A stretch of DNA of 64,000 nucleotides from Perna viridis (lineage: Eukaryota), in contig CM074514.1 of assembly GCA_037379345.1 (NCBI GenBank), positions 37,634,001 to 37,698,000 on the forward strand, in the 5' to 3' direction. This document shows, in pieces, positions 11,874-64,000 of this stretch (its first letter is position 1; the number at the start of each line of letters is the position of its first letter). A program made the translations under genes and the position numbers. The notes under the pieces were generated by a model that was not told the origin of the DNA, ran no database searches, and saw only the letters and a list, made by a program, of their open reading frames with translations.

Positions 11874-12995
11874 TTATTTTATAATATTCTTCAACATATA
11901 TTTTAAGGCTGTTGGAATGGGCAACAAATCAATATTAGAGTCAGAATATTGTCTCAAATGCTTCAATATACAAAAACTGCTTAATTCTTGCAAAGTTCTA
12001 GGCATTGAAGCATAATATTTAAAAATCGACACTAAAGAAGGATTATTAACCAGAGATGATGGATACCGATCCTCCTGTATCCATACTTCCCTGCTACAAT
12101 TGTATCCAGAATTTATAAGTAACATGACTATATCGTGGCAATAGTATTCACAAGCTGCTGTAAACAGGGGCGAGCCTTCAGCACTTGCATAAAAGTCTGC
12201 ACCTAACTCAATGAGACACTTGGCATTATCATAACAGTTATGAGTACATGCTATATGGAGAGCTGTATTTCCTTCACCATCTCTTTCATTTAATGGAACT
12301 TTATTTTCCACCAAATAGCGGAGGATTTCTACTTTGTGTTTTTTAATTGTGTACGATGATATGTGTAAAATGTTATCATTGATAGGAGTCTTCAATGTTA
12401 ATGAAGCATCTGCTTCATGCAGCACTTTTACAATGGATAAATGGCCATATGCCGCAGCATGGTGAATTGATGTCCATCCATCATCATCAACAGCGTCCAC
12501 ATTAGCCCCATGTGAAAGTAAGACCTGAGCTGCCTCATGATGATTTAGGGCAGCTGTGCAATGTAGAGGAGTGAATCCATCTATCTGTGTTGCATTTACA
12601 TTGCATCCTACAGAAATTAAATATTGTAATGTATGAATGTGTCCAAATGAAGCTGCCCAATGTATAGGAGTTCTTCCCTCAGCATCCAAGCTTTCAACAC
12701 TCGCATTATTTTCCACTAACTTCCTCACACATCCAGTGTAACCTTTAGCTGATGCAATGTGTATTGGACGTTTTTTCCATTTGTGGTCAGTATAATCAGG
12801 AGTATCTAGATCACACTTGCATTCAATTAAAATACTTAGAACATCTTCCCTACCATTTGAAGCTGCTTCAACAATTGGGGATTTTCCATTGTATAAAAAT
12901 ATTGGACTTATCTGCTTCCCATAGATTAAGAATTTGACATGTTCTGTATCATCCCTAGCAATAGCATCCAATAGTGAAATTTGATCATTTGGCAT
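11874..12995 (-). CDS. ankyrin repeat and SOCS box protein (ASB family), 373 aa, single coding exon
   Basis: About 8 ankyrin repeats (GRTPIHWAA, GFTPLHCTA, GNTALHIAC) and a C-terminal SOCS box PRTLQELSSFCILKHL...IDLLPIPTALKYML. Acceptor tttcag| at 13027-13032 on the minus strand, 31 nt before the ATG. Confidence 0.93.
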   Translation of the reverse strand: MPNDQISLLDAIARDDTEHVKFLIYGKQISPIFLYNGKSPIVEAASNGREDVLSILIECKCDLDTPDYTDHKWKKRPIHIASAKGYTGCVRKLVENNASVESLDAEGRTPIHWAASFGHIHTLQYLISVGCNVNATQIDGFTPLHCTAALNHHEAAQVLLSHGANVDAVDDDGWTSIHHAAAYGHLSIVKVLHEADASLTLKTPINDNILHISSYTIKKHKVEILRYLVENKVPLNERDGEGNTALHIACTHNCYDNAKCLIELGADFYASAEGSPLFTAACEYYCHDIVMLLINSGYNCSREVWIQEDRYPSSLVNNPSLVSIFKYYASMPRTLQELSSFCILKHLRQYSDSNIDLLPIPTALKYMLKNIIK

Positions 12996-16479: not shown

Positions 16480-16950
16480 TTTAATGACTGTAAGTTGAAA
16501 TGGCTGTTTTGAATGACTTGACTGCGTCACTCATAACAATGTTTGCTGGTATACTGTTCCATAATTTGATGGTTCTTGGTAAGAAAGATTGACCGACACT
16601 GAGGAATTTGGAAAGATAATGAGTTTAAAGTTCAGGACTATCAGAGGGCTGGAATTAACCAGTCTGTTTTAGTAACGGCAACTAGGGAATAATTAATTTT
16701 ATATAACATTATTAATCTTGTGTCTGACCTTCTATGAGCTAGGCTTCTTTTATATAGAAGTTTTATCATTTTGGACACAAAAGATGCATTGTGGTACCAA
16801 TTTGTCACAAACCTAGCTGCATGCCTTTGTACCATTTCAATTTTGTTTATGTCATCTATAATGTATGGATCCCAAATAGAGCTGGCATATTCCAATGATG
16901 GCCAGACTAAAGATTTATATGCTTGCTCTTTTACTTTGGTGGAACTGGTG
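16480..16950 (-). mobile_element. 5'-truncated non-LTR retrotransposon fragment (CR1/L2-like ORF2 C-terminus)
   Basis: KEQAYKSLVWPSLEYASSIWDPY...IEMVQRHAARFV, then SFLPRTIKLWNSIP; interrupted by a stop. Confidence 0.85.
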
Positions 16951-17188
16951 TTTAAAGGGGTAAATTCACTAACACTAATTTCTGGCCTACTATTTTGCCA
17001 AAGGTTCAACTTACATTCATAATATCTGAAATTTTCTGTTTGCCCATTTTAAAGCTAAAATACTATCTGAATACTGATATACAGAAAATATAGGCTGTAG
17101 TGTCATAATTTAGTCACGAGGAGGTCACAAATCTCTATTTCTACACAGTTGTCACAGAATTTTCACAATACTGAAATTAGGAGCATCT

Positions 17189-33400: not shown

Positions 33401-36400
33401 CTGTTAATATGGATTGTCTTATTGAATAACAAGAATGGAAATGGTGAGTATGCTAAAGAGATAACAACCCCACCTGGTTATCCTAAAAATTCCCTTGGAC
33501 CCTATTAAAAGATGTGTTGAGTATGATCCCTGACCCATGTCATACTCAGGACTTTGAACTTTTGTTGCCAGAATGCTTCTAGGCCAATCACACATGAAAG
33601 ACAGATTTAGCTATGAATGGTGGGGTCGGAGTCAGAATAATGTGCAAGGCTGTTGTTTCTGGGAGTTAACACACAGTTAAAATAAATTATTTTATTCATC
33701 ATATTTTTTCTTTTGTTTTATAGCAACTAGAATCCCTGTGTTGGCATAGAAATGGTAAAGAGTTTATGAGTGCACATATAGATGGAAGTTACACAGTATG
33801 GAATGCTGCAGACTCTGCCAATCCTAAGGAGGCTCCACTTACTCCATATGGTAATTTCAAGTAGTGTAGATTCTATTTTTACTATTGGTAGATTTTCTTA
33901 TAATGTAAACCCTACAAGTTTTTTTTCCGCTAGTGAACTTTTGTGGTTAGAAGCAATGATTTTATAACACAGCAGTTTGACTACCAATTTAAGAATAGTC
34001 GTATTTATCTTGTTCAACCTCTTCCATGTGTAAATTTAATGTTATATTTAAGATTCAAAAATAAGAAAGGAACTGGGTCATAGATATTTAAAAATAAAGA
34101 GGAAAGTGACGTTGATCTGTTTTTTTTGTTTTTATTTTTATTTTTAATTTGTTTTTTTTTTGTTTTTTGGTTTTTTTTTTTTCGAGGGATGGGTTTATAC
34201 TTTCTCGAATAACTAAGTGGCCTAAAAGTAATAGGATAATTAATTGGAAAGAGTGAATAACCAAAATATCACAAGTGCCAAAGAACGCCTAGATTTAACT
34301 AGTGTGCGGAGCTTGTTGGCATGAGTGATCATATTTTGGTTATTCACGATAACCAATTGATCATCCTATTTATTATACAGACTTCCTCCATTATTCATTG
34401 TTATTTTCAACATAAATTTAAAATTATTTGAACAGTGAATTGATATTCATGTTGTGACGTTTTGGCGGGAGAAGCGCAAGAGTGAAATTAGCGAATTTAT
34501 TTCACAGTGTGAATTATCTTTAAAAAAATTACACTGGGAACATTCAGTATATCACTGCTATCTATATAAGTTATTGTCTCTTGATTTACCTTAGTGACCT
34601 ATATAACAATGTGCAGATAAACTTTAAAATATTCTACAAACTCAGATGAAAAAATGAACTACTGTGAAAGTACTATTGTTTGTTGGGAACTGAATTTTGT
34701 GGTTTTCATGGTTAGGCCCAACCACAAAATTTGGTTCCCAACAAAATGAAAATTTTCATTGATTTGTATACAGAAAACTTCAAAACCATGAATTCAAGAA
34801 TCCATTAACTTGTGTGTTTTTCCTAAGCCATGAAAATTGGTATCCACAAATTAAAGAACTTTCACAGTATAACGACATGTATATTGTTTTTTAGGTCCAT
34901 TCCCGTGTAAAGCTATAAGTAAAATTGATTGGAAGACAGCAAAATCGTAAGTATTCTCTAGACTGATATTTGGTACTTTATCTCAGTTAGGTTGTACATG
35001 TATCATATCTTTTACCTGGTCTTCAGCCAAGTTTAGGAAAATTTTGTTTCAGTTGGGCAGTACTTGCATGTTTCTGACCTTGCAAATAGTTTTTTAAACT
35101 CACGATGATATTTTCATATGGTCTGGCTTATTTAGTTGCATTCCTTGAATGATATGTTTAACAATTCATTAACAACCTATTGAAAAATCTTTGTGTGATG
35201 TAATTCAGTTGTTATACCCCAGTCAGCAAGTCTGTGGTATATTAGAACTTCCCTGTCTGTCAAAATTTCGTCACAAAAATCTTGGCTCCCACTGGAAAGG
35301 TAGATTTCAAATTTGGTATATTGCATTATATTGAAAAGGGGCATGTTGAAAGTGATTTTGTTGTCTTATATTAACTTCCAGTATGGGTGGGGGTATACCT
35401 TTCACATCAACGCATGCCATTTCATGTATAATTATCATTTCTCTTGAAGGGATCCATTCATAATATTTTCCGGTGGAATGCCTCGTGCCAGTTACGGTGA
35501 TAGACATACCATTAGTGTTATGGAAGGTTCCAATAATCATGTAGTGTTTGATTTTACATCTAAAGTCATTGACTTCCAAACATTGGGTCGAGCTGATGCT
35601 AACGAAGAGGATGATAGCAGTGGTGAGTTTTGAAAAATAGGGAATTAATGTTTCAGTAATGAATCAATGTTTCCAAAAACTGGTCTTGTTGGATAATCCG
35701 AGAAAAAAAAATGCATGTAAAAAATTCTGATTTCAGTTGTCCTGACCTATGTCCCATTTCAAATACAAGAAATTTGGGATATAAGATTTTAGACTGCAAG
35801 GGACATATTAAATGCTATGCTTTGCTCTGATTGAATAAGCACAGATAAAAAATGTTCCTATACATTGAATACAGGTGGGAATACAATGTTCTTAATCGAT
35901 TTATATCATAAAAAGATACATGTTTTTAAAAAAAACTAATTACAATAATTTTATTCTATTAATCAACCAATCTGTGTTACAATTCTTTAAAAAAAAATTG
36001 CTTAAGTCAGTTTGACACAAGAATAATTTGATCAATTGCTTGCTATTGAAGAAAGATTGTGTTTTACAACCTTGAAAATAATTGCCAAGGATGTATCCTA
36101 CATGTACTATTTCATTCCAGAATATGACGAGCCCCATTGTTTAGTAGTCCTTTTAGAAGAAGAGTTGATTGTGATAGATTTAGAGTCTACCAACTGGCCA
36201 TCTTTCCAGAACCCATACCTGAACAGTTTACATTCATCACCTATCACCTGTTCACATCATGTTGCTAACGTACCTAGCTCACTATGGCAGAAAATAGAGG
36301 ATGTTGGAGAATCTCAGTCTAAATCATATTCGAAAATGGTAATTGTATATATTGAAATACTAGGATTTGTTTTCCTTAAGGATAAACCAGACTGATAATT

Positions 36401-39400
36401 AGTCAATATGCCAAGCAAAAATATAAGTGTTTCCTATTACGCCTTTGAAGAAATGGGTAGGTAGGAAGAGAATTTTGGGTTTTTTCCTCTTTTTTTTTTC
36501 ATTGCATCCAAGGGAGAAACCTTCTGACTTCCATCAGTGCTTATTGAAAAGTGATAACTTTAGGGTACACTATACTTAGCTGAAAAATAGGATGGGTAGG
36601 ATGATTAGAAACATACAATTTTTTTTTTAGCTCACCAGGCCGTAGGCCATGTGAGCTATTGCCATCACTTGGCATCCATCATCATCGTCATCATTAACCA
36701 TTCTTCAAAACTCATCTCATCCGACACTACTGGACCAATTTGAAGCAAACTTGGTATGAATGTTCCTTGGGGTATCCTGCCTAGAACTGATGTGGGGAGT
36801 TTGTTGAGAAACATGGCCGCCGTTACTAAAAATAGAACATAGGGGTCAGACAGTAGTTTTTCGCATATATCTCCAAAACTGTTAGGTTTAGCTTAATTAT
36901 GAGGTGGGTAAAAGTGTTCAGCATGATGAGATCTATCTGGTCAAATTTTCATTTTAATCTGTTAAGCCATGTTGGAGTTGTTGCCCTTTTTCGAAATTGT
37001 TTGCTATTTTTAATGTTATTTCTTAGAAAGTCTTCTCCTCTGTCACTACTTGACCAATTGGAACCAAACTTGGTATGAATGTTCCTTACAATATCCTGCA
37101 TAGAACTGATGTGGGGAGTTATGATCTGTCAAAAAACATGGCTGCCATTACTAAAAATACAACATAGAGGTCGGACAGTAGTTTTTCGCATACATGTATA
37201 TCTCCAAAACCATATTATTAGGACTGCAAAAGTCTTCAGGGATAAAAGTTGTCAGATAATTCCTGGTAAGAGTTAGTGTCCTTGAAAAGGGAAAAATGGG
37301 GGTTTTTTTTAGTTTTCAGCTAATTACTAGAAAACTGTGATAAAAATTCTTCTTAAATTTACTGCCCTTGAAAGACAAAATTCAACCAGGTGAGCAATTC
37401 AGGCTCCTAGGAGCCTCTTGTTTATTTGCCCTTATGTTCATTTCTTGTATATATTCGTATTAAGAGATATTCACTCAGTTACATGTATGTTCTGCTGGTT
37501 GTATAAACAGATCACTATTTTAGGTCATTGATATTTTGTAGGAGTGGCCAATCAATGGAGGAAAGCTTAAAGGTGCAGAAGGAACTAGTAAAGATTTATT
37601 ACTTACTGGGTAAATGTTTTAAGCCTTACTAGTTTCCGACAGAATTCGATTTCTGTAAATTCTTCTCCTGTCATTTTACTTTTCAACCAAAATTGGATTC
37701 TTGTGTAGGATGGAATGGTTTGAATTATTTCCCCACTCAAGATAGTAAAATTAAAACTTTAAACATGCATGCTGTATCAAGCATTGTGAATCAAAACTTT
37801 TGATTAAAGTTTAAATATTTTGTATACAACTCAGATAATTTAAACAGTCTGGAAACCAGAAAAAGGCCTTGAGACTTCCAAAGCCTTTATCTGTCACTGT
37901 TAGAACACTATTAGATTTTCACAATAAAACATAAAATGCTTCCTTATAGACACGAAGATGGTACAATTAAATTCTGGGATGCCTCAGGTGTGTCTATGCA
38001 GCTCATGTACACCCTTTCAACAGCTGCCATGTATAATGTTGAGTTCCATTCTGGGGAACAAAACTCACCTGAAGTAGAGGAAGAGTGGCCACCATTCAGG
38101 AAGGTAATTAATTTGACAGACTTATCACTTAGGTTAGTAAAAGTTCAGTTCTGGAAAACTTTGGCTAGTTCATGTTTCAAGAAAAAAAATACAAAAAGCC
38201 TCTTTTAAGAAAGAATTATACACTATATACTTCTCGTAAAATCATTCCTGATACTTACTGCCTATAATGCTCTTGATTAGTAGGGCAGTAGCCAGTGACT
38301 TAAATGCAAGGTGCAAAAAAAGGTATGTTTTAATTTTTTATTTTTTTTTAAGGTTGGTATTTATGACCCATTCAGTGACGATCCCAGACTAGGCATACAG
38401 AAGATTTCCATGTGTCCACTAAGTGAAACATGTGTTGTTGCCGGCACAGCAGGTCAAATCATGGTTCTACAGATGGAACGTGACGAAAGGGAATATGAAG
38501 TGTCATGCGACACCATGAACATTGTAAGCGATCGTGACAATTTTGTGTGGAAGGGTCATGAAGCATTGAAGTCAAGAGAAGGAGAAGTTAAATATACTGC
38601 TGGTTACCAGCCAATAGCCATGATTCAGTTACACCCTCCAGCTGCCTGTACGGCTCTAGCATTCCATTCTGGATGGCAATTGTAAGTATTGTAACATAAA
38701 ATAATTACACCACTGTTCAAAGAGTGGTTGGTTTATTAGATTTTGATAGCGTTGATTTACCGAATGTTTTACCGTGTAAAAATTTTTGATAATTCACACT
38801 GTGAAATAAATTTGGTAATTTTGCTCTGGCACTTTTTCCCACCAAAACATTACATGTATATCAATCCGTGATTAACACAAAACTTGAATTTTATGTAGAA
38901 AATGGCAACAAATAAGGGAGAAAATCTACATTATAAATAGAATAATCAGTTGGTTATACACTCTTTCCAATTAATTATCCTATAAATCACTTTGTCCTGT
39001 GAAAATTTCAATTTAATTATTTTACTGCCAATTGACAGAATTAAACAAAATTTGGTTTATAACTTAATATAGTTGGGGCATTTGTTGTATGGGGTTTGTG
39101 CTGCAGTCAAATATTTGCAGGACTAAGCCATTTTTACAAAGGACAAGTTTGATTTTTTTATTTCTTAAGTGGCATATGCTTGCTTGCTCTCCAATATCAG
39201 TTTCTCTTTTTAAGGGAGTGCTGTACAAGTTTAGGGTATACTTAACTTCATTTTGATTCTCAATCTGTTTTCTCATAGTGTCATTGAATTATTATGATAT
39301 AATGAAACAAAACATTTTTCATAGGCTAAAGCTGAAGCATACCTGCTTAGGACAAAAATGTTTATAACCCATACAGTTATTCAAACCTTGGCTTAAAAAA

Positions 39401-56030: not shown

Positions 56031-56422
56031 TATATGACCTTTATATAATCAATTGTAACGAACGCCTGTGTTTGAATCGGAAACTGGGTTATATTAAATA
56101 ATGCTAACCGATCATTTTATCTTTTAATGTTAACTTTCCTTTCTAATACAAGCAAAAAACACGCATAGACATGTGTATGATATGTTTTGAAAAAGATACG
56201 CTGTAGCGATCTTTGGGTCGCTTATGATATTGACCAGGGAACAGTTGAGGAACCAGATTAAACAGCTGGCAATGAATATTCATAGATAAAAGGGCGTGCT
56301 AATGTATATGACCTATATAGTCTTGTAACGACCCTCAGTGCCTGAATCGAAACTGGGTAATTTTCAAAGCTAACCGATTATTTCATATAAATTTCCCGTT
56401 CTCATACAAGCAAGAAACACAG
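56031..56422 (+). repeat. degenerate ~125-bp direct duplication (56031-56163 / 56305-56422)
   Basis: tatatgacct..ttgtaacga..tgaatcg..aaactgggt..gctaaccgat..atacaagcaa..aaacac in both copies. Confidence 0.75.
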
Positions 56423-57621
56423 GTATATTATACTTAAGAGGTACATTTTTATTTCGTATGAAGCTAGAACTATGACGCTGTGGCGGTAAACACGGCGATG
56501 ATCTGCAGCATTACGTGGCGTATACTTACATATTTATGCAAATCATATGCAAATATTAAGTACTGAAATTACGAGTGCAGGAAATATTATCGACTTGAAA
56601 ACAAAGCACTAGCAATAAAATCCCACAAAAAACTGGGATAAACATCAGGTGCTCCTAAAGGGTAAGCATGTCCTGCTCCTTTATATTGCAAGTAAGTATA
56701 ACCCGATAATAGTCTAGCAGCAATTATGCAGATCCGCTTAACCAATGAATTAAATGAGATTAATACTTGTATGATTATTTGAAAATTCTACTACATCTGA
56801 TTGACTCTACTTTAGGATTGACAACTAGTAACGAATATTTTTCGTTTTAAAATCAACAGATTTTTCAATGCATAGGTCTCATTTTAGAAAGTCGGCGTAA
56901 TTTGACCGATTGAATGGACTCTCCTGTTTAATCAAAATAAATGGGGATCAAAAGTTTATCTTTAATATCAGATTAGGTTATAGCCCAGACGTCTTATCAA
57001 GGAGATTATAAGTAGAGCCATTTCTAATTTTCTGGCAGGATTTATTATAAGGATTACTTTCTTTAGCTCATTTTAACACTAGACTTAAAATCGGGGGATC
57101 TGATTTACTAATACAGACTCGTGCTAAGTAAGCCTAAAAATACTGCTCTTTGTGCATCCAAGACCGTGTTCTTATACTGAATAGTTGAACGGGAATAAAT
57201 ACATTGAACAAAAGAGAACTAACTTTAAGTAAATATTATTTTACAGCTTTGTGTCTTCACTATATAAAGCAAGAGAAAGTCCAAAAATAGCATATAATAA
57301 TCTGCAGCTCAACTTGTTTTAAATTCCAAAACAGAATTTAGTGCACCCAAGTTCAAAAGATTAATTACATATTACTTACTGTAAACTGTGAATAACATAA
57401 ACACCACTGGATATTTGAATATTGGTAGCTATAAGACCAACATGTTTTATGTGTGCGTATTCGAATTTATTAAAACAGTGACATTCAACGGATTCAGCAT
57501 TGGTCAACGTGACAGAATGACTACTTAATGGCTGCTAGTTTAGCACTGAGAAAGTTCAAATTACTGCATTATTACTTTGTGTGAGCTGTTGAATTCTAAT
57601 TCTGTTCCAAGTTGTCCAACA

Positions 57622-59004
57622 ATGTCTTCGATTGTAACATATGAACTGTTACACACAGAAGAAAGTACAAGTGATGAAATAAACGAACTCGTTCGGACAG
57701 TAGAAGAAAAAACTTTATTGCAACAACGGCGGTCGATGGCCGTTCGCGTAAAACTACAAGAACTTAGCGATAGGCGAAATAAACTGGACGCACAAAGACT
57801 CGACAGACTTGCAGATTATGGCGTTAATGTAGATTTAAAAGGCATCAAAGATGAGGTCCAAAAATCAATTCAAGAGGAGAAGGAAAGATATCTCCGTGAA
57901 AGACAATGCAAGGAAATGGACGAGGAAACAAATGCTGAAGATATACGTCCCGCAAGTCCTGAAATTGAAATACAGAACACACCCGCAATAGGTGTCACAA
58001 AAAATCCAGACGACCAGAACAGACTGGGTAAAGTGATTGGAAATTTACAAAATAACCAGAAACAATTTGACAAAGAGAATAAAACACCAAGCTCAAAACA
58101 AAGACAGTCATTCGTAACATCAACTCAAAACAGGACTATGAACCAGACGAATGAAGCTCACCTGGAGAGACGTAGCTCACTAACTCCTGGTGGCCCTTGG
58201 GGGTCCCAGAAGCCTCCTGAAAGACGAAGTTCGCTTACTCCGAGTGGACCACAGAAAAATCAAATTAATTCAGGTAAGCAAAATTTACTCAAATCTGCAG
58301 GAGCTCCTACACAAATGTCTTCAGATAGGCGAAACTCGCTGACTTCCGGTGGAGCGATTGTGAAAAATTTTGAAAGGCGAAATTCTCTCATCAATAATGG
58401 CACATTAAGGAATAATGTAGAGAGGCGAAACTCACTTACTACTGGAGGAAATTTGCCAGACAACATGCAACCATGGATGAGTTATTCCTTTACATCTGGC
58501 TTAACTCCTAAACATAGCAATTATTCAGAAAGACGCGATTCAATTAATTCAATTGAGGCGAATACAAGCAGCAACCGTTTAGGGAGGCGAAACTCTCTAA
58601 CTTTTAGTGGAACTACCGAAAATAGAACGATTTTAGAGAGACGAAAGTCAATTACTTCAACCAGTCCCCTGGTCAACAGAATACTTTCTGAAAGACGTAA
58701 TTCACTAACAATTGGAGACATTCCTACTAGCAACATGCCTTTAATGAGGCGCAATTCGCTCACTTCCGGTGGAAATATGATGGCAAAAATGATGGCACCA
58801 GAGAGGAGGAACTCTTTAAACACGACAAAAGGAGGTAACAGAAAGTTATCCGTGAAATCATCAAAAGTCAAGAGACGGAGTTCTTTCGGGGGTTCATTTC
58901 AAAGTGAAAAATCAAAAATATTGAATTCACTAACTGCTCCGTTAGAAAATAGGGAGTTCAAGAAAGCTTCGAAGACAATTTCAAATGCTTTAAAATTCGT
59001 TTAG
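57622..59004 (+). CDS. uncharacterised intronless 460-aa protein: N-terminal coiled coil plus a disordered tail with a periodic RRxS(L/I/F) array
   Basis: 1383-nt open frame from the first ATG (ACAATGT; the ORF-track start at 57577 is TTG); 12 RRxS-hydrophobic motifs; protein-level homology to 59795-60166. Confidence 0.85.
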   Translation: MSSIVTYELLHTEESTSDEINELVRTVEEKTLLQQRRSMAVRVKLQELSDRRNKLDAQRLDRLADYGVNVDLKGIKDEVQKSIQEEKERYLRERQCKEMDEETNAEDIRPASPEIEIQNTPAIGVTKNPDDQNRLGKVIGNLQNNQKQFDKENKTPSSKQRQSFVTSTQNRTMNQTNEAHLERRSSLTPGGPWGSQKPPERRSSLTPSGPQKNQINSGKQNLLKSAGAPTQMSSDRRNSLTSGGAIVKNFERRNSLINNGTLRNNVERRNSLTTGGNLPDNMQPWMSYSFTSGLTPKHSNYSERRDSINSIEANTSSNRLGRRNSLTFSGTTENRTILERRKSITSTSPLVNRILSERRNSLTIGDIPTSNMPLMRRNSLTSGGNMMAKMMAPERRNSLNTTKGGNRKLSVKSSKVKRRSSFGGSFQSEKSKILNSLTAPLENREFKKASKTISNALKFV

Positions 59005-59794
59005 GATTTTATTTGGCGTGTATCTGGAGGTTGCCATACACACACCAGTGTAACTGTGGCGGATCGATTCAGAGGTTTTGCAAAAGGGACCGTATTGCTT
59101 ACTTTTGGTTTTTGATCTTCCTTAATTTTTCCAAAGGCGATATTCCCCTAAAGATCCAGTGACGGAGTCGGGGTTTCCTGAGGTTGAAACCTCCCTGATC
59201 GGAAAATTTCATTTAAGTCGCTAAAATTTTTTGTAAAAATGAATAAATATTAGCCTATACCCTCTTTCCAAAATCTCTAGGTCATAACCTATAGCCGAAA
59301 TCAACTGGTTTATTCCTTAAAACTATGTGCTACTAACACTATTTAATGTTGACTAATTGATCAACTTTGAGTTTTTGCAACGATAATTTGAAGTCTTTCT
59401 TCTCATCCAAGCCAAAGTTATCATTCTTTGCATATGCAACTAAAAACAACGTGCTATAAGAATCAAGGTCCCTCTCGGCACTTCTCGTTACACATAGACC
59501 GAGTAGCTCCGATTGTCGCTTAGCATTCAATTTATAAATTGAATTTTATACATATTTTAGGGTCACCTAACTCTTTTCAGTTTTAAATTTAAATATTCCA
59601 CTGTGAACATTCACAATGTACATAGTGAACCAAAAGTTAAGATTTCTCTTTAGTTTGACCAACCATATGAATAAATACGAAAGTAAAACTTAATGCACTG
59701 GAAATTAATTAGGAAACACATATTTTAATTAATAATCCAGACCTACAACTTATATACTACTGCTTCACAAATTTGTGTTATTTCGTTTTACCAA

Positions 59795-60166
59795 ATGTCA
59801 GTCACGTCGGATTCAACTGAGGATCTTTACAAGACCGGCGAAAATGCGGACGACGAAGAATTAAAAAATCTTGTTAAATCAGTGGAGGAAAGGACAGTTC
59901 TGAGATTAAAAAGATCGGCGAAATTTGAAGAAAAACTGAAGGAACTTACCAAAAGAAGTTACAAACTGTATCAGTTGAGGTTAGTACGACTTTCAAAGAA
60001 AAGAGATCATCGCAAATTTAGACGGACAGAGAATGGCGTTTGGAAAGTACCGGAAGTTGATAAAGTTCAAGGAAATTGTTGCTATGACAATGCGCTGGAC
60101 GTGGCGCAGAATCTAAACGATCAGGAAAGACTTAACGAGAAACTTAAACAGCTGCAGACTTTCTAA
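59795..60166 (+). CDS. short tandem paralog (123 aa) of the 57622-59004 gene, N-terminal domain only; may be a pseudogene
   Basis: EELKNLVKSVEERTVLRLKRSAKFEEKLKELTKRSYKLYQLRLVRL aligns without gaps to DEINELVRTVEEKTLLQQRRSMAVRVKLQELSDRRNKLDAQRLDRL; second block LDVAQNLNDQERL versus IGVTKNPDDQNRL. Confidence 0.7.
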   Translation: MSVTSDSTEDLYKTGENADDEELKNLVKSVEERTVLRLKRSAKFEEKLKELTKRSYKLYQLRLVRLSKKRDHRKFRRTENGVWKVPEVDKVQGNCCYDNALDVAQNLNDQERLNEKLKQLQTF

Positions 60167-62215
60167 GAGACGACAAAGGAAAACACAAAGTGAAGATGGG
60201 GGAGCTGGGAATTGTTTTGGGTTCTGTAAAAAAGACATTAACCCGAAAATATAGTACATATGATAATGCTCCATCATGATATCGTCACGCTATCACGTCT
60301 ACGACTTGCTGTCATGATTACGACACGAGTTTTAGTAGCTTTAAATGGAAATACAAAATAGGTACATTAGTACATTTTGTACCTTAGAACCAAATTGTTA
60401 TGAAATATGAAACTTTTGTTTTTAGATTCTGCCATAACGATTGTTTCTTTCTTTCTTTCTTTTTGTTTGTTACGTTATGTTTTGCTTGAATGTCTTGTTT
60501 TGCTTCTAGTACTAGCATTTGAGTTGTTGTCACTTCTATATGTGCAAGCTGTATTGCTTTTCTTTTAGTTTTGTTACATTTTTCGTATAGCTAGATTGAA
60601 TAGAAAAATAGAAAAATATTTCCAAGAATCATTTTTTATAAAAGTGTATAACTAAGTTCTTGAACTTAAATGCAGCTTATTATTTACCGGTAAATGCACG
60701 TCTGGTGTGCGAAGGAGATAGCGAAATTTTAAACATTCTCTTGTGGCATAAAATAAACTATGGTATTCAAGGACAATCGCGAAGTTATTTGTACAACATT
60801 GACAACTTGCTTTAAAAAAACACCAAAAATTTTTTAAAAGATACAGTTTTGACTGGCGCGGATTCTTTGGGACGGAACCAGCATACACCCCCTAAAACAA
60901 GATAAAAAACATTATTAAAGCTTGATTTTTCACAAATTCTACTCCCAAAAATTTATCTGGTTTCGCTTCGCTCCACTTTTTATTCTTTTTTCTGTTCCCT
61001 AACCTAAAATCCTGGATCCATCCTTTCGTGTTATCGACACGAACGCGCATTTGCATTCTGGGTTTACCCGTTTAGAGAGCGGCTCGTGTTTATAGACGGG
61101 ATGTGATATTTCTGCGCGTCAGGAAATGTTGGTCATTAATGTTTTTTCGTGTCGTTATTTGACTTTTTAGTTTATTTTGGTATGTATACACTACTTGAAG
61201 ACCTTTTGGTTAGTATTTTCTATTTTTATAAAGGTTATTGTATGATGGAGCATTTGTTGCGTTTCAATATATCTGTTCCCTTTCCTAATGTTTAAGGTTT
61301 AGAAGGCATGCCATGTAGATGAGATTCATTTTTTTCGTGTTAGCCACGTCTTGTATATTATTACTTGTAATATTCTAACTTAGTGATATTTGGGCTAGGG
61401 TGTTTGCTCTTTTCTCTGTATTTTTCATGCCGACGGCTGATTTGTTCTTTCTAACAGTGCATTTTTCTGATATAAATTTTTCAGTAGTAATACTTTCGCA
61501 GCACATCTTCATTCTTAAAGTTTCCGGTTCATACTGTGTTGCTAGTTAGTTTTATGTTTCTATGCTCTGTAACTGATTCTTTCTCAGTCTCATTCTGTTT
61601 TCTTTATTTTGTCCCTGACTTTTCTTTTTACCTCAGTTAGTTCTGATTTTACTCCTATTAGTTTCGTTTTCAATCTATCTATTCAAAATGTAAGCATTTA
61701 AACAATAATTTATTGATTCACCGAAAATGTTATTTTAACAAAAAGATGACCGTACAATTATCCAGACAAACTGTTCAAAAGTACAAAACAAAACCGACTT
61801 TATCGATGAAAACAACAACAAAAACGTCCTGTACTCGTATTAATTTTCGCGGATTTTGTCAAACGAACATGTTCGTAAGATTGATATTCGCAGTTTTGAA
61901 AATAAATAAAGGTTCCATATGGTTAAAATATAAATTTCGGGGATACCTATCTATCGCGCATATTTGTCCACCGCAATAATAGCGAAAATCTGTACATATA
62001 GAGAATTGATATGTCAACAGTTTGAAAATAGTCTGTACAACATTTAGACTGCTATTTGGTTATGTACGAAAGATGCAGGCTAAAAAGCTTTAACGTACTC
62101 CTGCAAATACGTGGCATTCATTTACGGTGCTCACGCACTCATTTCTTTTAAAATTATGTGACAAGGCATCGAAAAGTAGGCTAGGTTGTAAATCCGCGTT
62201 TTTCCTTCAGTACAT

Positions 62216-64000
62216 CTACGTAGCCGCCGTAGCTAATGGAATGAGGAAAAATATGGCAACAACAATAGTACCAATAATAAACAAGATGAAAAAGAAAGCA
62301 TCGAGGACTCCTCCGACCGTCTTCCATTGGATATCATCAAGATCATAGTCATAATTTAATTTAGGTGGTTCGTCGATTTCTGGATCTTCCATTGGATCTG
62401 GTTCTACTTCCGGTATCGCTTTATCCCCACGCCATTTCTTGCATTTTCGGCATGTTAGAAGGGAAGTAATGTGCTTTATCCATTTTGGAATCTTTGTCGA
62501 TTCATTTTGGTGATATACACGTAAAGTCATTATTGTAATTACAGTCGAAAGAGCACTCATGACCAGCATGAGCGTCAGAAAGTAACAAAGCAGAGACATC
62601 GGCTGTGAAGCGGGAGGCAAGTTCTCCGAAACCATCGTCAAGAACACTGCAAATGTCAGGAAGGCCGTGACAGCATAGCCAACTCTTTCACCTGAGTCTG
62701 CCGGCAGCAAGAAAACTAAACCGTTCAGAAGACCCAGAATTACAATGGGTATAACCATATTGATGAGAAAGTAACCTGGACGTCGTTTGATGTTCAGGGT
62801 ATATGTCAGGTAGGAAGCACTGTTAAATGTCTCGTTGATCACTGATGTACTAGTCAGTTCCCATTCGACATTTGTCTGGAAGTGTTGGGTATCGATTTCT
62901 GTTTCAACACTCTCCAATGTCACCTGAAAACAACGGCTAAATAGAAGTGTTTGCAGGTGCGAGTTTACTTTGTATTAGTTTTTTTTTTCAAATAAGCTAT
63001 CATCGCGGAGTAATCACACTGCTAAAAACCACGGTATTTCTTACATAAAAAAATGGTTAAAGTAAGATAAAATACCGAATTTAGTCGATCAAAAATCACA
63101 AAAGCTTGTCTATTTTTTAAAAAAGAGGGCTAGCTGGCACCGATGCATAGACTTTCAAAAAACCTATTACCAAGTACGCTTCTATATAACTTGACGTAAC
63201 TTATTATTACGAAAGTGATGTGTTAAATTTCATGCATCAAAACAAAAGGCTTGCAATTTTATGAGTTGGCAAAACAGCAGCGCCATACTAAATTTGAACA
63301 CCATCGCTGTTGTATATATATACATATATATAAAGGTCTGAAAACTTCCCAACGATGTTAGAACTGTCAAATTTGCGATGCAAATTTTTGCTCGTTCCCT
63401 CCGCGGGACTCGAACTCGTACCGCTGTGACATCTATGGCAACATCGCATGCACAGAGTCCAATGCCCTCGGCCAGCTAGGCTATATAAAATATAGTGGTC
63501 TAGGGCGCTGGACTTTGTGCAGGCGGTGTTGCCATAGATGTCACAGCGGAATTTTTCAGACCTTTCTATATGTTTACATATCTTTCCTGTATCAATTTGA
63601 TCCGATGGAGCAGTGTAGCGAATAGAGTCGTCACATTCTGAGACGTTTGATAAATTGTGTTGTATTGCACCCGAGTTATGGATAAAATCAGTGAAAGCTT
63701 TAGCGAGATTTTCGAGATAAAGACTTTTCTATCATGACGCTATAAGAAAACATTGTCGCAAATCAATGGCTACCGGAATAATGCGAAAATTTGCTATCAG
63801 CGAAAGATACCAAACAACTTATATTGTAGCGTTTATGAAAGAGAAATAAAGGTTTGAAAAACACACGCTAGATATTATTGAAATTACCTGGTTGTCATAG
63901 TAACCCCATGGAGTGAATTTCACCTCGCAGGTCTGGTTGTCGAAAGGATAGAACGAAACATCGACAGGGCATCCAGTTCTAGAAACTACTCCAACGGTCC
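62216..64000 (-). CDS. nicotinic acetylcholine receptor-like Cys-loop channel subunit (non-alpha), 3' part
   Basis: Exon 64000-63888 gives TVGVVSRTGCPVDVSFYPFDNQTCEVKFTPWGYYDNQ (Cys-loop C-x13-C). It splices in phase 0 to exon 62923-62216, which encodes NVEWEL, pre-M1 KRRP, M1-M4 and LPADSGER. Confidence 0.93.
63329..63570. mobile_element. foldback made of two head-to-head tRNA-SINE-like segments in the nAChR intron
   Basis: 48-bp arms 63421-63468 / 63502-63549 (43/48 match); outer arms AAAGGTCTGAAAA / TTTTCAGACCTTT; minus-strand B-box GTTCGAGTCC at 63406-63415. Confidence 0.7.

What the first reader, a model, noticed from the sequence alone, without database searches (positions are those of the whole stretch)
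57622..60193. Unrecognised tandem gene pair: coiled-coil protein with a 12-site phospho-array next to a paralog lacking the array
Seen: two intronless same-strand ORFs about 790 bp apart share a ~46-aa helical block (ELVRTVEEKT..RS...KLQEL..R..KL...RL.RL versus NLVKSVEERT..RS...KLKEL..R..KL...RL.RL) and a second block (V.xN..DQ.RL...LQ). Only the long gene has the RRxS tail. The similarity is clearer in protein than in DNA, which suggests an old duplication under coding constraint. I do not recognise the family. Inference: a kinase-regulated long form plus a short form that could heterodimerise through the coiled coil as a decoy or constitutive partner.
Basis: partly seen in the sequence, partly recalled or inferred. 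Interest (0 to 1): 0.78.

Follow-up and report, generated by a model that had tools for sequence, protein, structure and literature searches.

The report
Mussel-only phosphoprotein gene pair
Two neighbouring intronless genes form a small, unnamed protein family found so far only in mussels: the long one has grown from 3 to 12 copies of a motif that fits a kinase target site, and the short one is an old, conserved copy that never carries that motif.

Summary
The long ORF (57622-59004, 460 aa) and the short ORF (59795-60166, 123 aa) lie 790 bp apart on the + strand. They share an N-terminal helix (27/65 identical, E 2e-8) and a second helical block. Only the long one has 12 RRxS sites; shuffles give 0.5.

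Both are real genes. A profile search of 1.84 billion proteins found four further clusters: three long-type proteins of 242-254 aa, one an uncharacterised Mytilus coruscus protein, and one short-type protein of 128 aa. No Pfam, PDB or fold match exists.

In M. coruscus the long gene is also a single exon beside the same cys-loop receptor gene. Long orthologues carry only three RRxS sites, so this genome expanded the array to 14 units of about 18 aa, two of them decayed. Synonymous sites are saturated while the motif E-R-R-N/S-S-L/I-T is kept.

Short and long forms separate cleanly on a tree (100/99). Both evolve with dN below dS. Two probable RNA runs carry an unspliced transcript of about 750 nt from the short gene. 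The long gene is barely detected.

My best reading is a mussel-restricted helical protein whose disordered basic tail is a multi-site PKA/PKG-type kinase substrate. That part is inferred. The decoy-heterodimer idea was not tested, and the unequal expression weighs weakly against it.

The parts
57622..59004 (+). Long gene: single-exon CDS of 460 aa plus stop
   Evidence: ORF. Start and end coincide with those of the orthologues P0003, P0004 and P0007. A 99%-identical protein, P0001, sits on a colinear Logan contig.
57634..57816 (+). Helix 1 (aa 5-65): the family's most conserved block, shared with the short gene. It contains an invariant R-S (aa 37-38).
   Evidence: AF2 helix 5-65 with pLDDT 93-97 over aa 21-60. 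BLASTP E 2e-8 against the short gene. Invariant columns.
57835..57936 (+). Helix 2 (aa 72-105): present in long forms only
   Evidence: AF2 helix 72-105. The GxxxDxxxIRDEVKKT block is conserved among long orthologues.
58006..58053 (+). Helix 3, the 'second block' (aa 129-144), shared with the short gene
   Evidence: AF2 helix 129-144. N128, L135 and L142 are invariant in 7 sequences.
58099..58110 (+). Decayed ancestral site A (QRQS, aa 160-163). Orthologues have RRKS or RRNS here.
   Evidence: Alignment A2 and the site lists.
58165..58884 (+). Array of 14 units of about 18 aa (aa 182-421). Twelve units keep E-R-R-(N/S)-S-(L/I/F)-T-x-G-G.
   Evidence: Site list and shuffle test. Per-position pN/pS is 0.0-0.3 in the motif and about 0.8-1.0 in the linkers, with pS about 0.7-0.8. 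TRF finds no DNA tandem repeat.
58276..58287 (+). Decayed unit (KQNL, aa 219-222). A K219R allele occurs in other individuals.
   Evidence: A 35-aa gap in the site spacing, the unit table and the SNP list.
58477..58488 (+). Decayed unit (MSYS followed by FTSG, aa 286-289)
   Evidence: A 36-aa gap in the site spacing and the unit table.
58930..59001 (+). Conserved C-terminal basic block (aa 437-460, L.AP.E..EFKK.S..I.NALK..)
   Evidence: Aligned with the P0003 and P0004 C-termini. tblastn and tblastx hits lie at L010 10535-10723.
59242..59247 (+). Putative poly(A) signal AATAAA of the long gene, 238 nt after the stop
   Evidence: Pattern scan only. It has no read support.
59678..60432 (+). Extent of the short gene's transcript contigs (723 and 748 nt, unspliced). 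The strand is inferred from the ORF.
   Evidence: read laying records 7 and 15, at depth 20.5 and 10.6, in runs X11 and X12. The flanks have zero depth.
59795..60166 (+). Short gene: single-exon CDS of 123 aa plus stop
   Evidence: ORF. Orthologue P0006 is 128 aa and 47-50% identical. Identical protein P0002 occurs on 3 contigs.
59819..60007 (+). Short-gene helix 1 (aa 9-71)
   Evidence: AF2 helix with pLDDT 89-95 over aa 21-60.
60086..60160 (+). Short-gene C-terminal helix (aa 98-122), equivalent to the long gene's helix 3
   Evidence: AF2 and alignment.

Best explanation
These are two real single-exon genes of a small protein family that public databases hold only from mussels (Mytilidae) and that has never been characterised. 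The ancestral long form is about 240-250 aa. It has an acidic N-terminal module of three helices, a disordered basic tail with three R-R-x-S sites, and a short conserved basic C-terminal block. In this genome the stretch between the second and third sites was duplicated repeatedly, long ago, into about 14 units of 18 aa. Twelve of them still read E-R-R-(N/S)-S-(L/I/F)-T-x-G-G. The first ancestral site has decayed to QRQS. The short gene is an old paralogue that keeps only helices 1 and 3. It is conserved in at least one other species and is expressed. The proposed mechanism is inferred, not shown. The RRxS-hydrophobic sites would be phospho-acceptors for a basophilic Ser/Thr kinase such as PKA or PKG, possibly a CaMK-type kinase. 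Graded multi-site phosphorylation would neutralise the tail, which carries about +32 charge at pI 11.7, and so switch its binding to a partner or create phospho-dependent docking sites. The conserved helices would provide self-association or partner binding that both paralogues share. The short form would then perform the helix function without kinase control.
For: Shown by tool results:
- The pair is homologous.
- The family consists of only 6 clusters among 1.84e9 representatives. One is M. coruscus CAC5417403.1, annotated 'uncharacterized'.
- Microsynteny is conserved: a single-exon long gene is followed by a minus-strand cys-loop receptor gene whose protein is 70-90% identical.
- Three RRxS sites are conserved in every long orthologue although overall identity is only 36-50%.
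- The window has 12 sites where 0.54 are expected.
- Motif positions that were not used to define the sites (-1, +2, +4, +5) have pN/pS 0.35. Linkers have 0.8-1.0, and synonymous sites are saturated.
- dN/dS is 0.25 between two close long orthologues. For the short orthologue pair pN is 0.31 against pS 0.81.
- Short and long forms split at 100/99 support.
- The short gene is covered by unspliced contigs of 723 and 748 nt in two runs that cover only discrete, gene-sized parts of the region.
- AF2 predicts long helices with pLDDT above 90 in the shared block.
- There is no hydrophobic segment, and the acidic head (pI 5.3) contrasts with the basic tail (pI 11.7).

From established knowledge: R-R-x-S/T followed by a hydrophobic residue is the PKA/PKG consensus.
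Against: There is no phosphorylation data of any kind. The kinase reading rests on motif resemblance alone. Expression of the long gene is almost unsupported: one 213-nt contig at depth 3 in X11, and no reads in about 20-24% of two raw RNA-seq runs. Within-species SNPs in the long CDS are 8 nonsynonymous to 2 synonymous. That fits weak constraint outside the motifs, though none of the SNPs hits an RRxS core. X11 and X12 are only guessed to be RNA. 'Coiled coil' is not demonstrated, because the heptad scores are modest and the AF2 monomer shows only long single helices with pTM 0.33.
Confidence: 0.55

Rival explanations
1. The short form heterodimerises with the long form through the shared helix and acts as a decoy or constitutive partner of a kinase-regulated long form.
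For: The helix is shared at 42% identity, with conserved hydrophobic positions. The two genes are adjacent on the same strand. Both are kept under constraint.
Against: In the two probable RNA runs the short gene has depth 10-20 and the long gene 0-3, so they are not co-expressed at similar levels there. No short gene lies within the 10 kb fetched on either side of the long gene in M. coruscus. The paralogues are old and diverged (branch lengths above 1), so the interface may have diverged as well. No multimer prediction was available.
Confidence: 0.15
2. The 18-aa basic units are primarily binding repeats, for example for a polyanionic partner such as microtubules, actin, nucleic acid or membranes. 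Tau/MAP repeats, with their KXGS and PGGG motifs, would be the analogy. The RRxS...GG motif would be a contact element first, and phosphorylation would be at most a secondary off-switch.
For: The tail has pI 11.7 and about +32 charge. The period is regular at 16-19 aa, and conservation extends beyond RRxS to L/I at +4, T at +5 and G at +8. Copy number changed from 3 to 12 between lineages, as is usual for avidity repeats.
Against: There is no sequence or fold match to any repeat family. The strictly invariant residues are exactly R, R and S, which make up the kinase consensus. In the orthologues the three sites are not regularly spaced repeats.
Confidence: 0.2
3. The long protein is a peptide precursor cut at the dibasic RR sites, releasing a dozen related peptides of 14-17 aa.
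For: Regularly spaced RR pairs flank similar short sequences.
Against: There is no signal peptide or any other hydrophobic segment. The N-terminus is acidic and helical, and the highest 15-aa Kyte-Doolittle mean is 0.45. Amidation-type G-(K/R)-R ends are absent. The conserved residues lie after the RR (S, L, T), not in the body of a peptide.
Confidence: 0.02
4. One or both ORFs are non-functional: chance ORFs, decaying retrocopies or ORFs of a mobile element.
For: Both are intronless. The long gene has 8 nonsynonymous to 2 synonymous SNPs and almost no RNA support.
Against: Each ORF is single-copy in the 723-Mb genome. Intact orthologous ORFs with the same start and end exist in other mussels at saturated synonymous divergence. 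Synteny is conserved. dN/dS is 0.25 in orthologues. The short gene is transcribed.
Confidence: 0.04

Closest known systems
Mytilus coruscus uncharacterised protein CAC5417403.1 / UniRef100_A0A6J8EBR4 (242 aa)
   Same: It is an orthologue of the long gene. It has the same MSSI... start, helix blocks and C-terminal block, a single exon, and the same downstream cys-loop receptor neighbour.
   Different: It has only 3 RRxS sites against 12 and is only 41% identical. No short paralogue lies within the 10 kb fetched on either side. It has no functional annotation.
Multi-site PKA-regulated disordered regions, such as the CFTR R domain, and small PKA/PKG substrate phosphoproteins such as the DARPP-32, inhibitor-1 and ARPP families. 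This comparison comes from general knowledge.
   Same: A disordered segment with many R-R-x-S sites. The expected logic is graded or threshold control through the number of phosphates.
   Different: There is no sequence relationship. Here the sites are a regular 18-aa tandem array attached to a helical module, and phosphorylation is unproven.
Stathmin/Op18 (from general knowledge)
   Same: A small, intronless-sized helical protein regulated through basophilic-kinase serines, including an RRKS site. The helices mediate partner binding.
   Different: There is no detectable homology. Stathmin's sites lie N-terminal to or within the helix rather than in a C-terminal repeat array, and its tubulin-binding repeats are absent here.
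Tau/MAP2/MAP4 microtubule-binding repeats (from general knowledge)
   Same: Tandem basic repeats carrying a Ser-containing kinase motif and a Gly-Gly element, with copy number varying between paralogues.
   Different: Tau repeats are 31-32 aa with KXGS and PGGG. These are 18 aa with RRxSLTxGG. Pfam gives no match.

Membership tests
Any Pfam-A family | A score above the family's gathering threshold for any of 24,736 models | tested here: not met
   The long protein matches 0 families. The short protein's only hit is YvrJ at E 3.4. Across 7 family members the best hit is FokI_D3 at E 0.009, which I take to be noise.
Any protein with a solved structure | Sequence-profile or fold similarity above background | tested here: not met
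   Profile searches against PDB sequences gave one hit at E 0.69 and none. Foldseek's best E was 6. VIA-align wide gave Z no higher than 6.5, all generic single long helices covering aa 1-68.
PKA/PKG-type basophilic kinase substrate site (a motif class, not a family) | R-R-x-S/T with a hydrophobic residue at +1 | tested here: met
   All 12 sites are RRxS and all 12 have L, I or F at +1. Three such sites are conserved in every long orthologue.
PKA/PKG-type basophilic kinase substrate site (a motif class, not a family) | The serines are actually phosphorylated | not testable with these tools
   No phosphoproteome or assay is available.
Coiled-coil dimerisation domain | A continuous heptad a/d hydrophobic pattern and a predicted or observed parallel or antiparallel oligomer | tested here: inconclusive
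   AF2 monomer models give helices of 60 residues at pLDDT above 90. The best heptad register fills only 50-57% of a/d positions. No multimer tool was available.
Neuropeptide or prohormone precursor | An N-terminal signal peptide | tested here: not met
   The N-terminus is acidic and helical, and the highest 15-aa hydropathy mean is 0.45.
Mobile-element or multi-copy ORF | Several copies in the genome | tested here: not met
   Six-frame searches of the 723-Mb assembly find only the two genes themselves. All other hits have E of 0.067 or higher and are unrelated low-complexity ORFs.

The most novel reading that the evidence does not exclude
This would be a mussel-specific signalling module in which the number of kinase sites acts as an evolvable rheostat. 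The long protein would be a multivalent phospho-switch that reversibly tethers a conserved helical adaptor to a polyanionic structure such as cilia, sperm or muscle cytoskeleton. The array would have been amplified fourfold under selection in this lineage, and the short paralogue would be the unregulated version of the same adaptor.
Probability: 0.15. Interest if true: 0.6.

Novelty: new variant of a known kind. Interest (0 to 1): 0.42.

Why it matters
This turns an anonymous 'uncharacterized protein' into a defined, taxon-restricted family with recognisable parts: a helical head, an RRxS tail and a C-terminal block. It has two ancient paralogue types. It also gives a clean natural example of a kinase-consensus array expanding from 3 to 12 sites, with the motif kept over a span in which synonymous sites saturated and the linkers randomised. 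If the sites are phosphorylated, the family would be a candidate effector of cAMP/cGMP signalling in mussels, which controls gill cilia, catch muscle and sperm. It would also be a convenient system for asking how site number tunes a phospho-switch. It does not overturn any concept, since lineage-restricted disordered proteins with repeated short motifs are common.

Tried and rejected
- **Pfam:** scans of both proteins and of all 7 family members found nothing credible.
- **PDB sequence profiles:** two searches found nothing.
- **ESM Atlas:** no usable hit for either protein.
- **Word-based protein search:** three searches found only the proteins themselves.
- **JGI metagenome contigs:** the first alignment was too diverged to search with. 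A long-form alignment matched 73 patterns but no true relative.
- **Fold searches:** Foldseek against PDB and VIA-align wide returned only generic long helices.
- **Literature:** a full-text search for the motif RRNSL found nothing relevant. A search for run accessions identified only the cold-seep metagenome paper.
- **Further paralogues in this genome:** none. The best extra hit, L007, is an unrelated GRNSLYTSGP repeat ORF.
- **Tandem repeats at DNA level:** TRF finds none in the array, so the array is not a recent microsatellite-like expansion.
- **Copy-number variation of the array:** three other contigs are colinear with the window.
- **Readings rejected:** the peptide-precursor and pseudogene or mobile-element readings, for the reasons given under the rival explanations.
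- **Checked and dropped:** the bathymodioline-type contigs L014-L017 and L021-L023 break at shared repeat boundaries and look like DNA. They therefore say nothing about expression.
- **Housekeeping:** no contig was taken for human, no N stretch was touched and no spliced model was needed.
Full report
**What is there**

On the + strand of an AT-rich (about 33% GC) animal genome lie two ORFs 790 bp apart. The long one runs 57622-59004 (460 aa from the ATG). The short one runs 59795-60166 (123 aa). BLASTP of the two gives 27/65 identities at E 2e-8 over their N-termini. A global alignment adds a second shared block near the end of the short protein.

The long protein carries 12 RRxS sites at aa 183-418. 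They are spaced 16-19 aa apart, with two double gaps. Shuffling its own residues gives 0.54 sites on average and at most 6 in 20,000 trials. The short protein has none.

**Are they genes?**

Word-based searches found only the proteins themselves. Because the claim rested on the absence of relatives, I ran the full HMM search with the alignment of the pair. In 1.84 billion representatives it found six clusters:
- the two query proteins;
- three long-type proteins: P0003 (242 aa), P0004 (254 aa) and P0005 (242 aa, a cluster of nine near-identical proteins);
- one short-type protein, P0006 (128 aa).

P0003 is Mytilus coruscus CAC5417403.1, annotated 'uncharacterized'. The P0005/P0008 cluster occurs, among other places, in a South China Sea Site F cold-seep metagenome (PMC9357000). 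I therefore infer that it is host DNA of a seep mussel. That is an inference, not a shown result.

The multiple alignment shows that all members begin at the same Met-Ser-Ser and that the long forms end at the same basic C-terminal block. Both window ORFs are thus complete single-exon coding sequences.

In M. coruscus the orthologue is likewise annotated as one exon. It is followed by a minus-strand cys-loop receptor gene. That receptor's protein is 70-90% identical to the one encoded at window 62216-62923. Microsynteny is therefore conserved, and the window's organism is a bivalve related to mytilid mussels. Its name is coded in the tools and I did not try to uncover it.

**Selection**
- Two long orthologues that differ by 9% in DNA have dS 0.10 and dN 0.025, so dN/dS is 0.25.
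- The window's short gene and its orthologue P0006 have pS 0.81 (saturated) and pN 0.31, with intact ORFs of similar length.
- On a maximum-likelihood tree of the shared module, the two short forms and the five long forms fall on either side of one branch with 100/99 support. The duplication therefore predates the separation of the species that carry them. The window's long gene sits on a long branch (1.37, against about 0.46 for P0003 and P0004).
- Within the species, four other contigs (L001, L018, L019, L020) show 8 nonsynonymous and 2 synonymous SNPs in the long CDS and 1 synonymous SNP in the short CDS. The long gene's linkers are weakly constrained, and none of the changes touches an RRxS core.

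**The array is an expansion**

Every long orthologue has exactly three RRxS sites: RRKS or RRNS, then GRRKS or GRRMS, then (K/Q)RRNS. In the window the first site has decayed to QRQS. The second and third correspond to the first (aa 183) and last (aa 418) sites of the array, and ten further sites lie between them.

With the two decayed units (KQNL at aa 219, MSYS at aa 286) there are about 14 units of 18 aa. TRF detects no DNA repeat, and unit cores are only 25-78% identical in DNA. The duplications are therefore old.

Per-position counts across the 12 units show synonymous saturation (pS about 0.7-0.8) everywhere. For the R, R and S positions pN is near 0, but that is circular because those residues defined the sites. 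The unbiased motif positions (-1 E, +2 N/S, +4 L/I/F, +5 T) give pN/pS 0.35, against 0.8-1.0 in the linkers. The motif E-R-R-(N/S)-S-(L/I/F)-T-x-G-G has thus been maintained while everything between copies drifted.

**Expression**

Only one reads call was allowed, and I laid 56200-62100 (5,901 letters, within the operators' limit). In two small runs guessed to be RNA (X11, X12), contigs of 723 and 748 nt cover 59678-60432. That is exactly the short gene with short UTRs, unspliced, at depth 20.5 and 10.6.

The flanks have zero depth, and the 3' end of the neighbouring receptor gene has depth 116-290. Such discrete coverage argues that these runs are RNA. The long gene has one 213-nt contig at depth 3 in X11 and nothing in X12. 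Two raw RNA-seq runs (X21, X22, about a fifth to a quarter read) have no reads on either gene.

Ten probable RNA runs from six studies hold 16-23% of the words of a 3-kb query. That is about the size of the short transcript. I infer, without having shown it, that they too carry the short gene only.

**Structure and family**

AF2 with the 7-sequence alignment predicts the following:
- short protein: helices 9-71 and 98-122;
- long N-terminus: helices 5-65, 72-105 and 129-144.

In both, pLDDT exceeds 90 in the shared helix, but pTM is 0.33, so there is no compact fold. Heptad occupancy is moderate. Foldseek and VIA-align return only generic long helices. Pfam, PDB profiles and the ESM Atlas give nothing.

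Neither protein has a hydrophobic segment. The long protein's head is acidic (pI 5.3), and its tail is strongly basic (pI 11.7, about +32 charge).

**Interpretation**

Several things are shown. This is a conserved, mussel-restricted, two-paralogue family. The RRxS motif is the selected element of the tail. The array was expanded fourfold in this lineage. The short paralogue is expressed and constrained.

The rest is inferred. RRxS followed by a hydrophobic residue is the PKA/PKG consensus, so the tail is most simply a multi-site basophilic-kinase substrate whose charge or docking properties change with phosphorylation. The shared helices would give the self-association or partner-binding function common to both paralogues.

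The decoy-heterodimer idea remains possible but has no direct support. The unequal expression weighs mildly against it, as does the lack of a short gene within the 10 kb fetched on either side of the long gene in M. coruscus.

The alternatives fare as follows:
- The binding-repeat reading (a basic, tau-like avidity array) is not excluded.
- A peptide-precursor reading fails for lack of a signal peptide.
- A pseudogene or mobile-element reading fails on conservation, single-copy status and synteny.

**Verdict**

The family is uncharacterised rather than of a new kind, so I rate the interest as moderate.

Noticed in passing
window 62216-62923 (-), extending beyond 63885: This is the last exon of a cys-loop (nicotinic-type) receptor subunit (Neur_chan_memb, E 3e-18). 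It is orthologous to the gene downstream of the M. coruscus long-form gene, at 70-90% aa identity. Its 3' UTR region (61696-62100) has depth 116-290 in the two probable RNA runs, far above the pair studied here.
   Followed up: partly
window 11874-12995 (-): A single-exon ORF of 373 aa with ankyrin repeats and a C-terminal SOCS box (ASB-type E3 adaptor; Ank_2 E 2e-47, SOCS_box E 7.5e-6).
   Followed up: partly
window 36036-36395 and 38311-38685 (+): These ORFs look like exons of an Lgl/tomosyn-type WD40 gene. The first matches Pfam LLGL at E 2e-7. The second has no Pfam hit.
   Followed up: partly
window 56200-56590: Many RNA reads and contigs match only 30-60 nt here and then run on into unrelated sequence, with loose ends at 56202, 56204 and 56242. 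The stretch behaves like a short dispersed repeat that is transcribed from many loci.
   Followed up: no
L007 1027-1848 (G000:C12:36794601-36795422, +): A 273-aa ORF made of about 17-aa units reading (E)(V/M)GRNSLYTSGP(L)CSNT. It came up as a weak hit (E 0.067) to the array. It looks like a translated tandem DNA repeat and is unrelated to this family.
   Followed up: no
window 58521-58871 (-): A 116-aa antisense ORF with repeated SE(F/L)RL. It is simply the reverse-complement reading of the RRNSL array and not a gene.
   Followed up: yes
window 16641-17009 (-): A 122-aa ORF containing ...SLEYASSIWDPY...MVQRHAARFV.... From memory it resembles the C-terminal region of non-LTR retrotransposon ORF2 fragments. 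Pfam gave no hit.
   Followed up: partly
L012 301-816, compared with L011 181-567: The short-form orthologue was called once as 171 aa (P0015, with an upstream in-frame start) and once as 128 aa (P0006). The family alignment supports the 128-aa start.
   Followed up: partly
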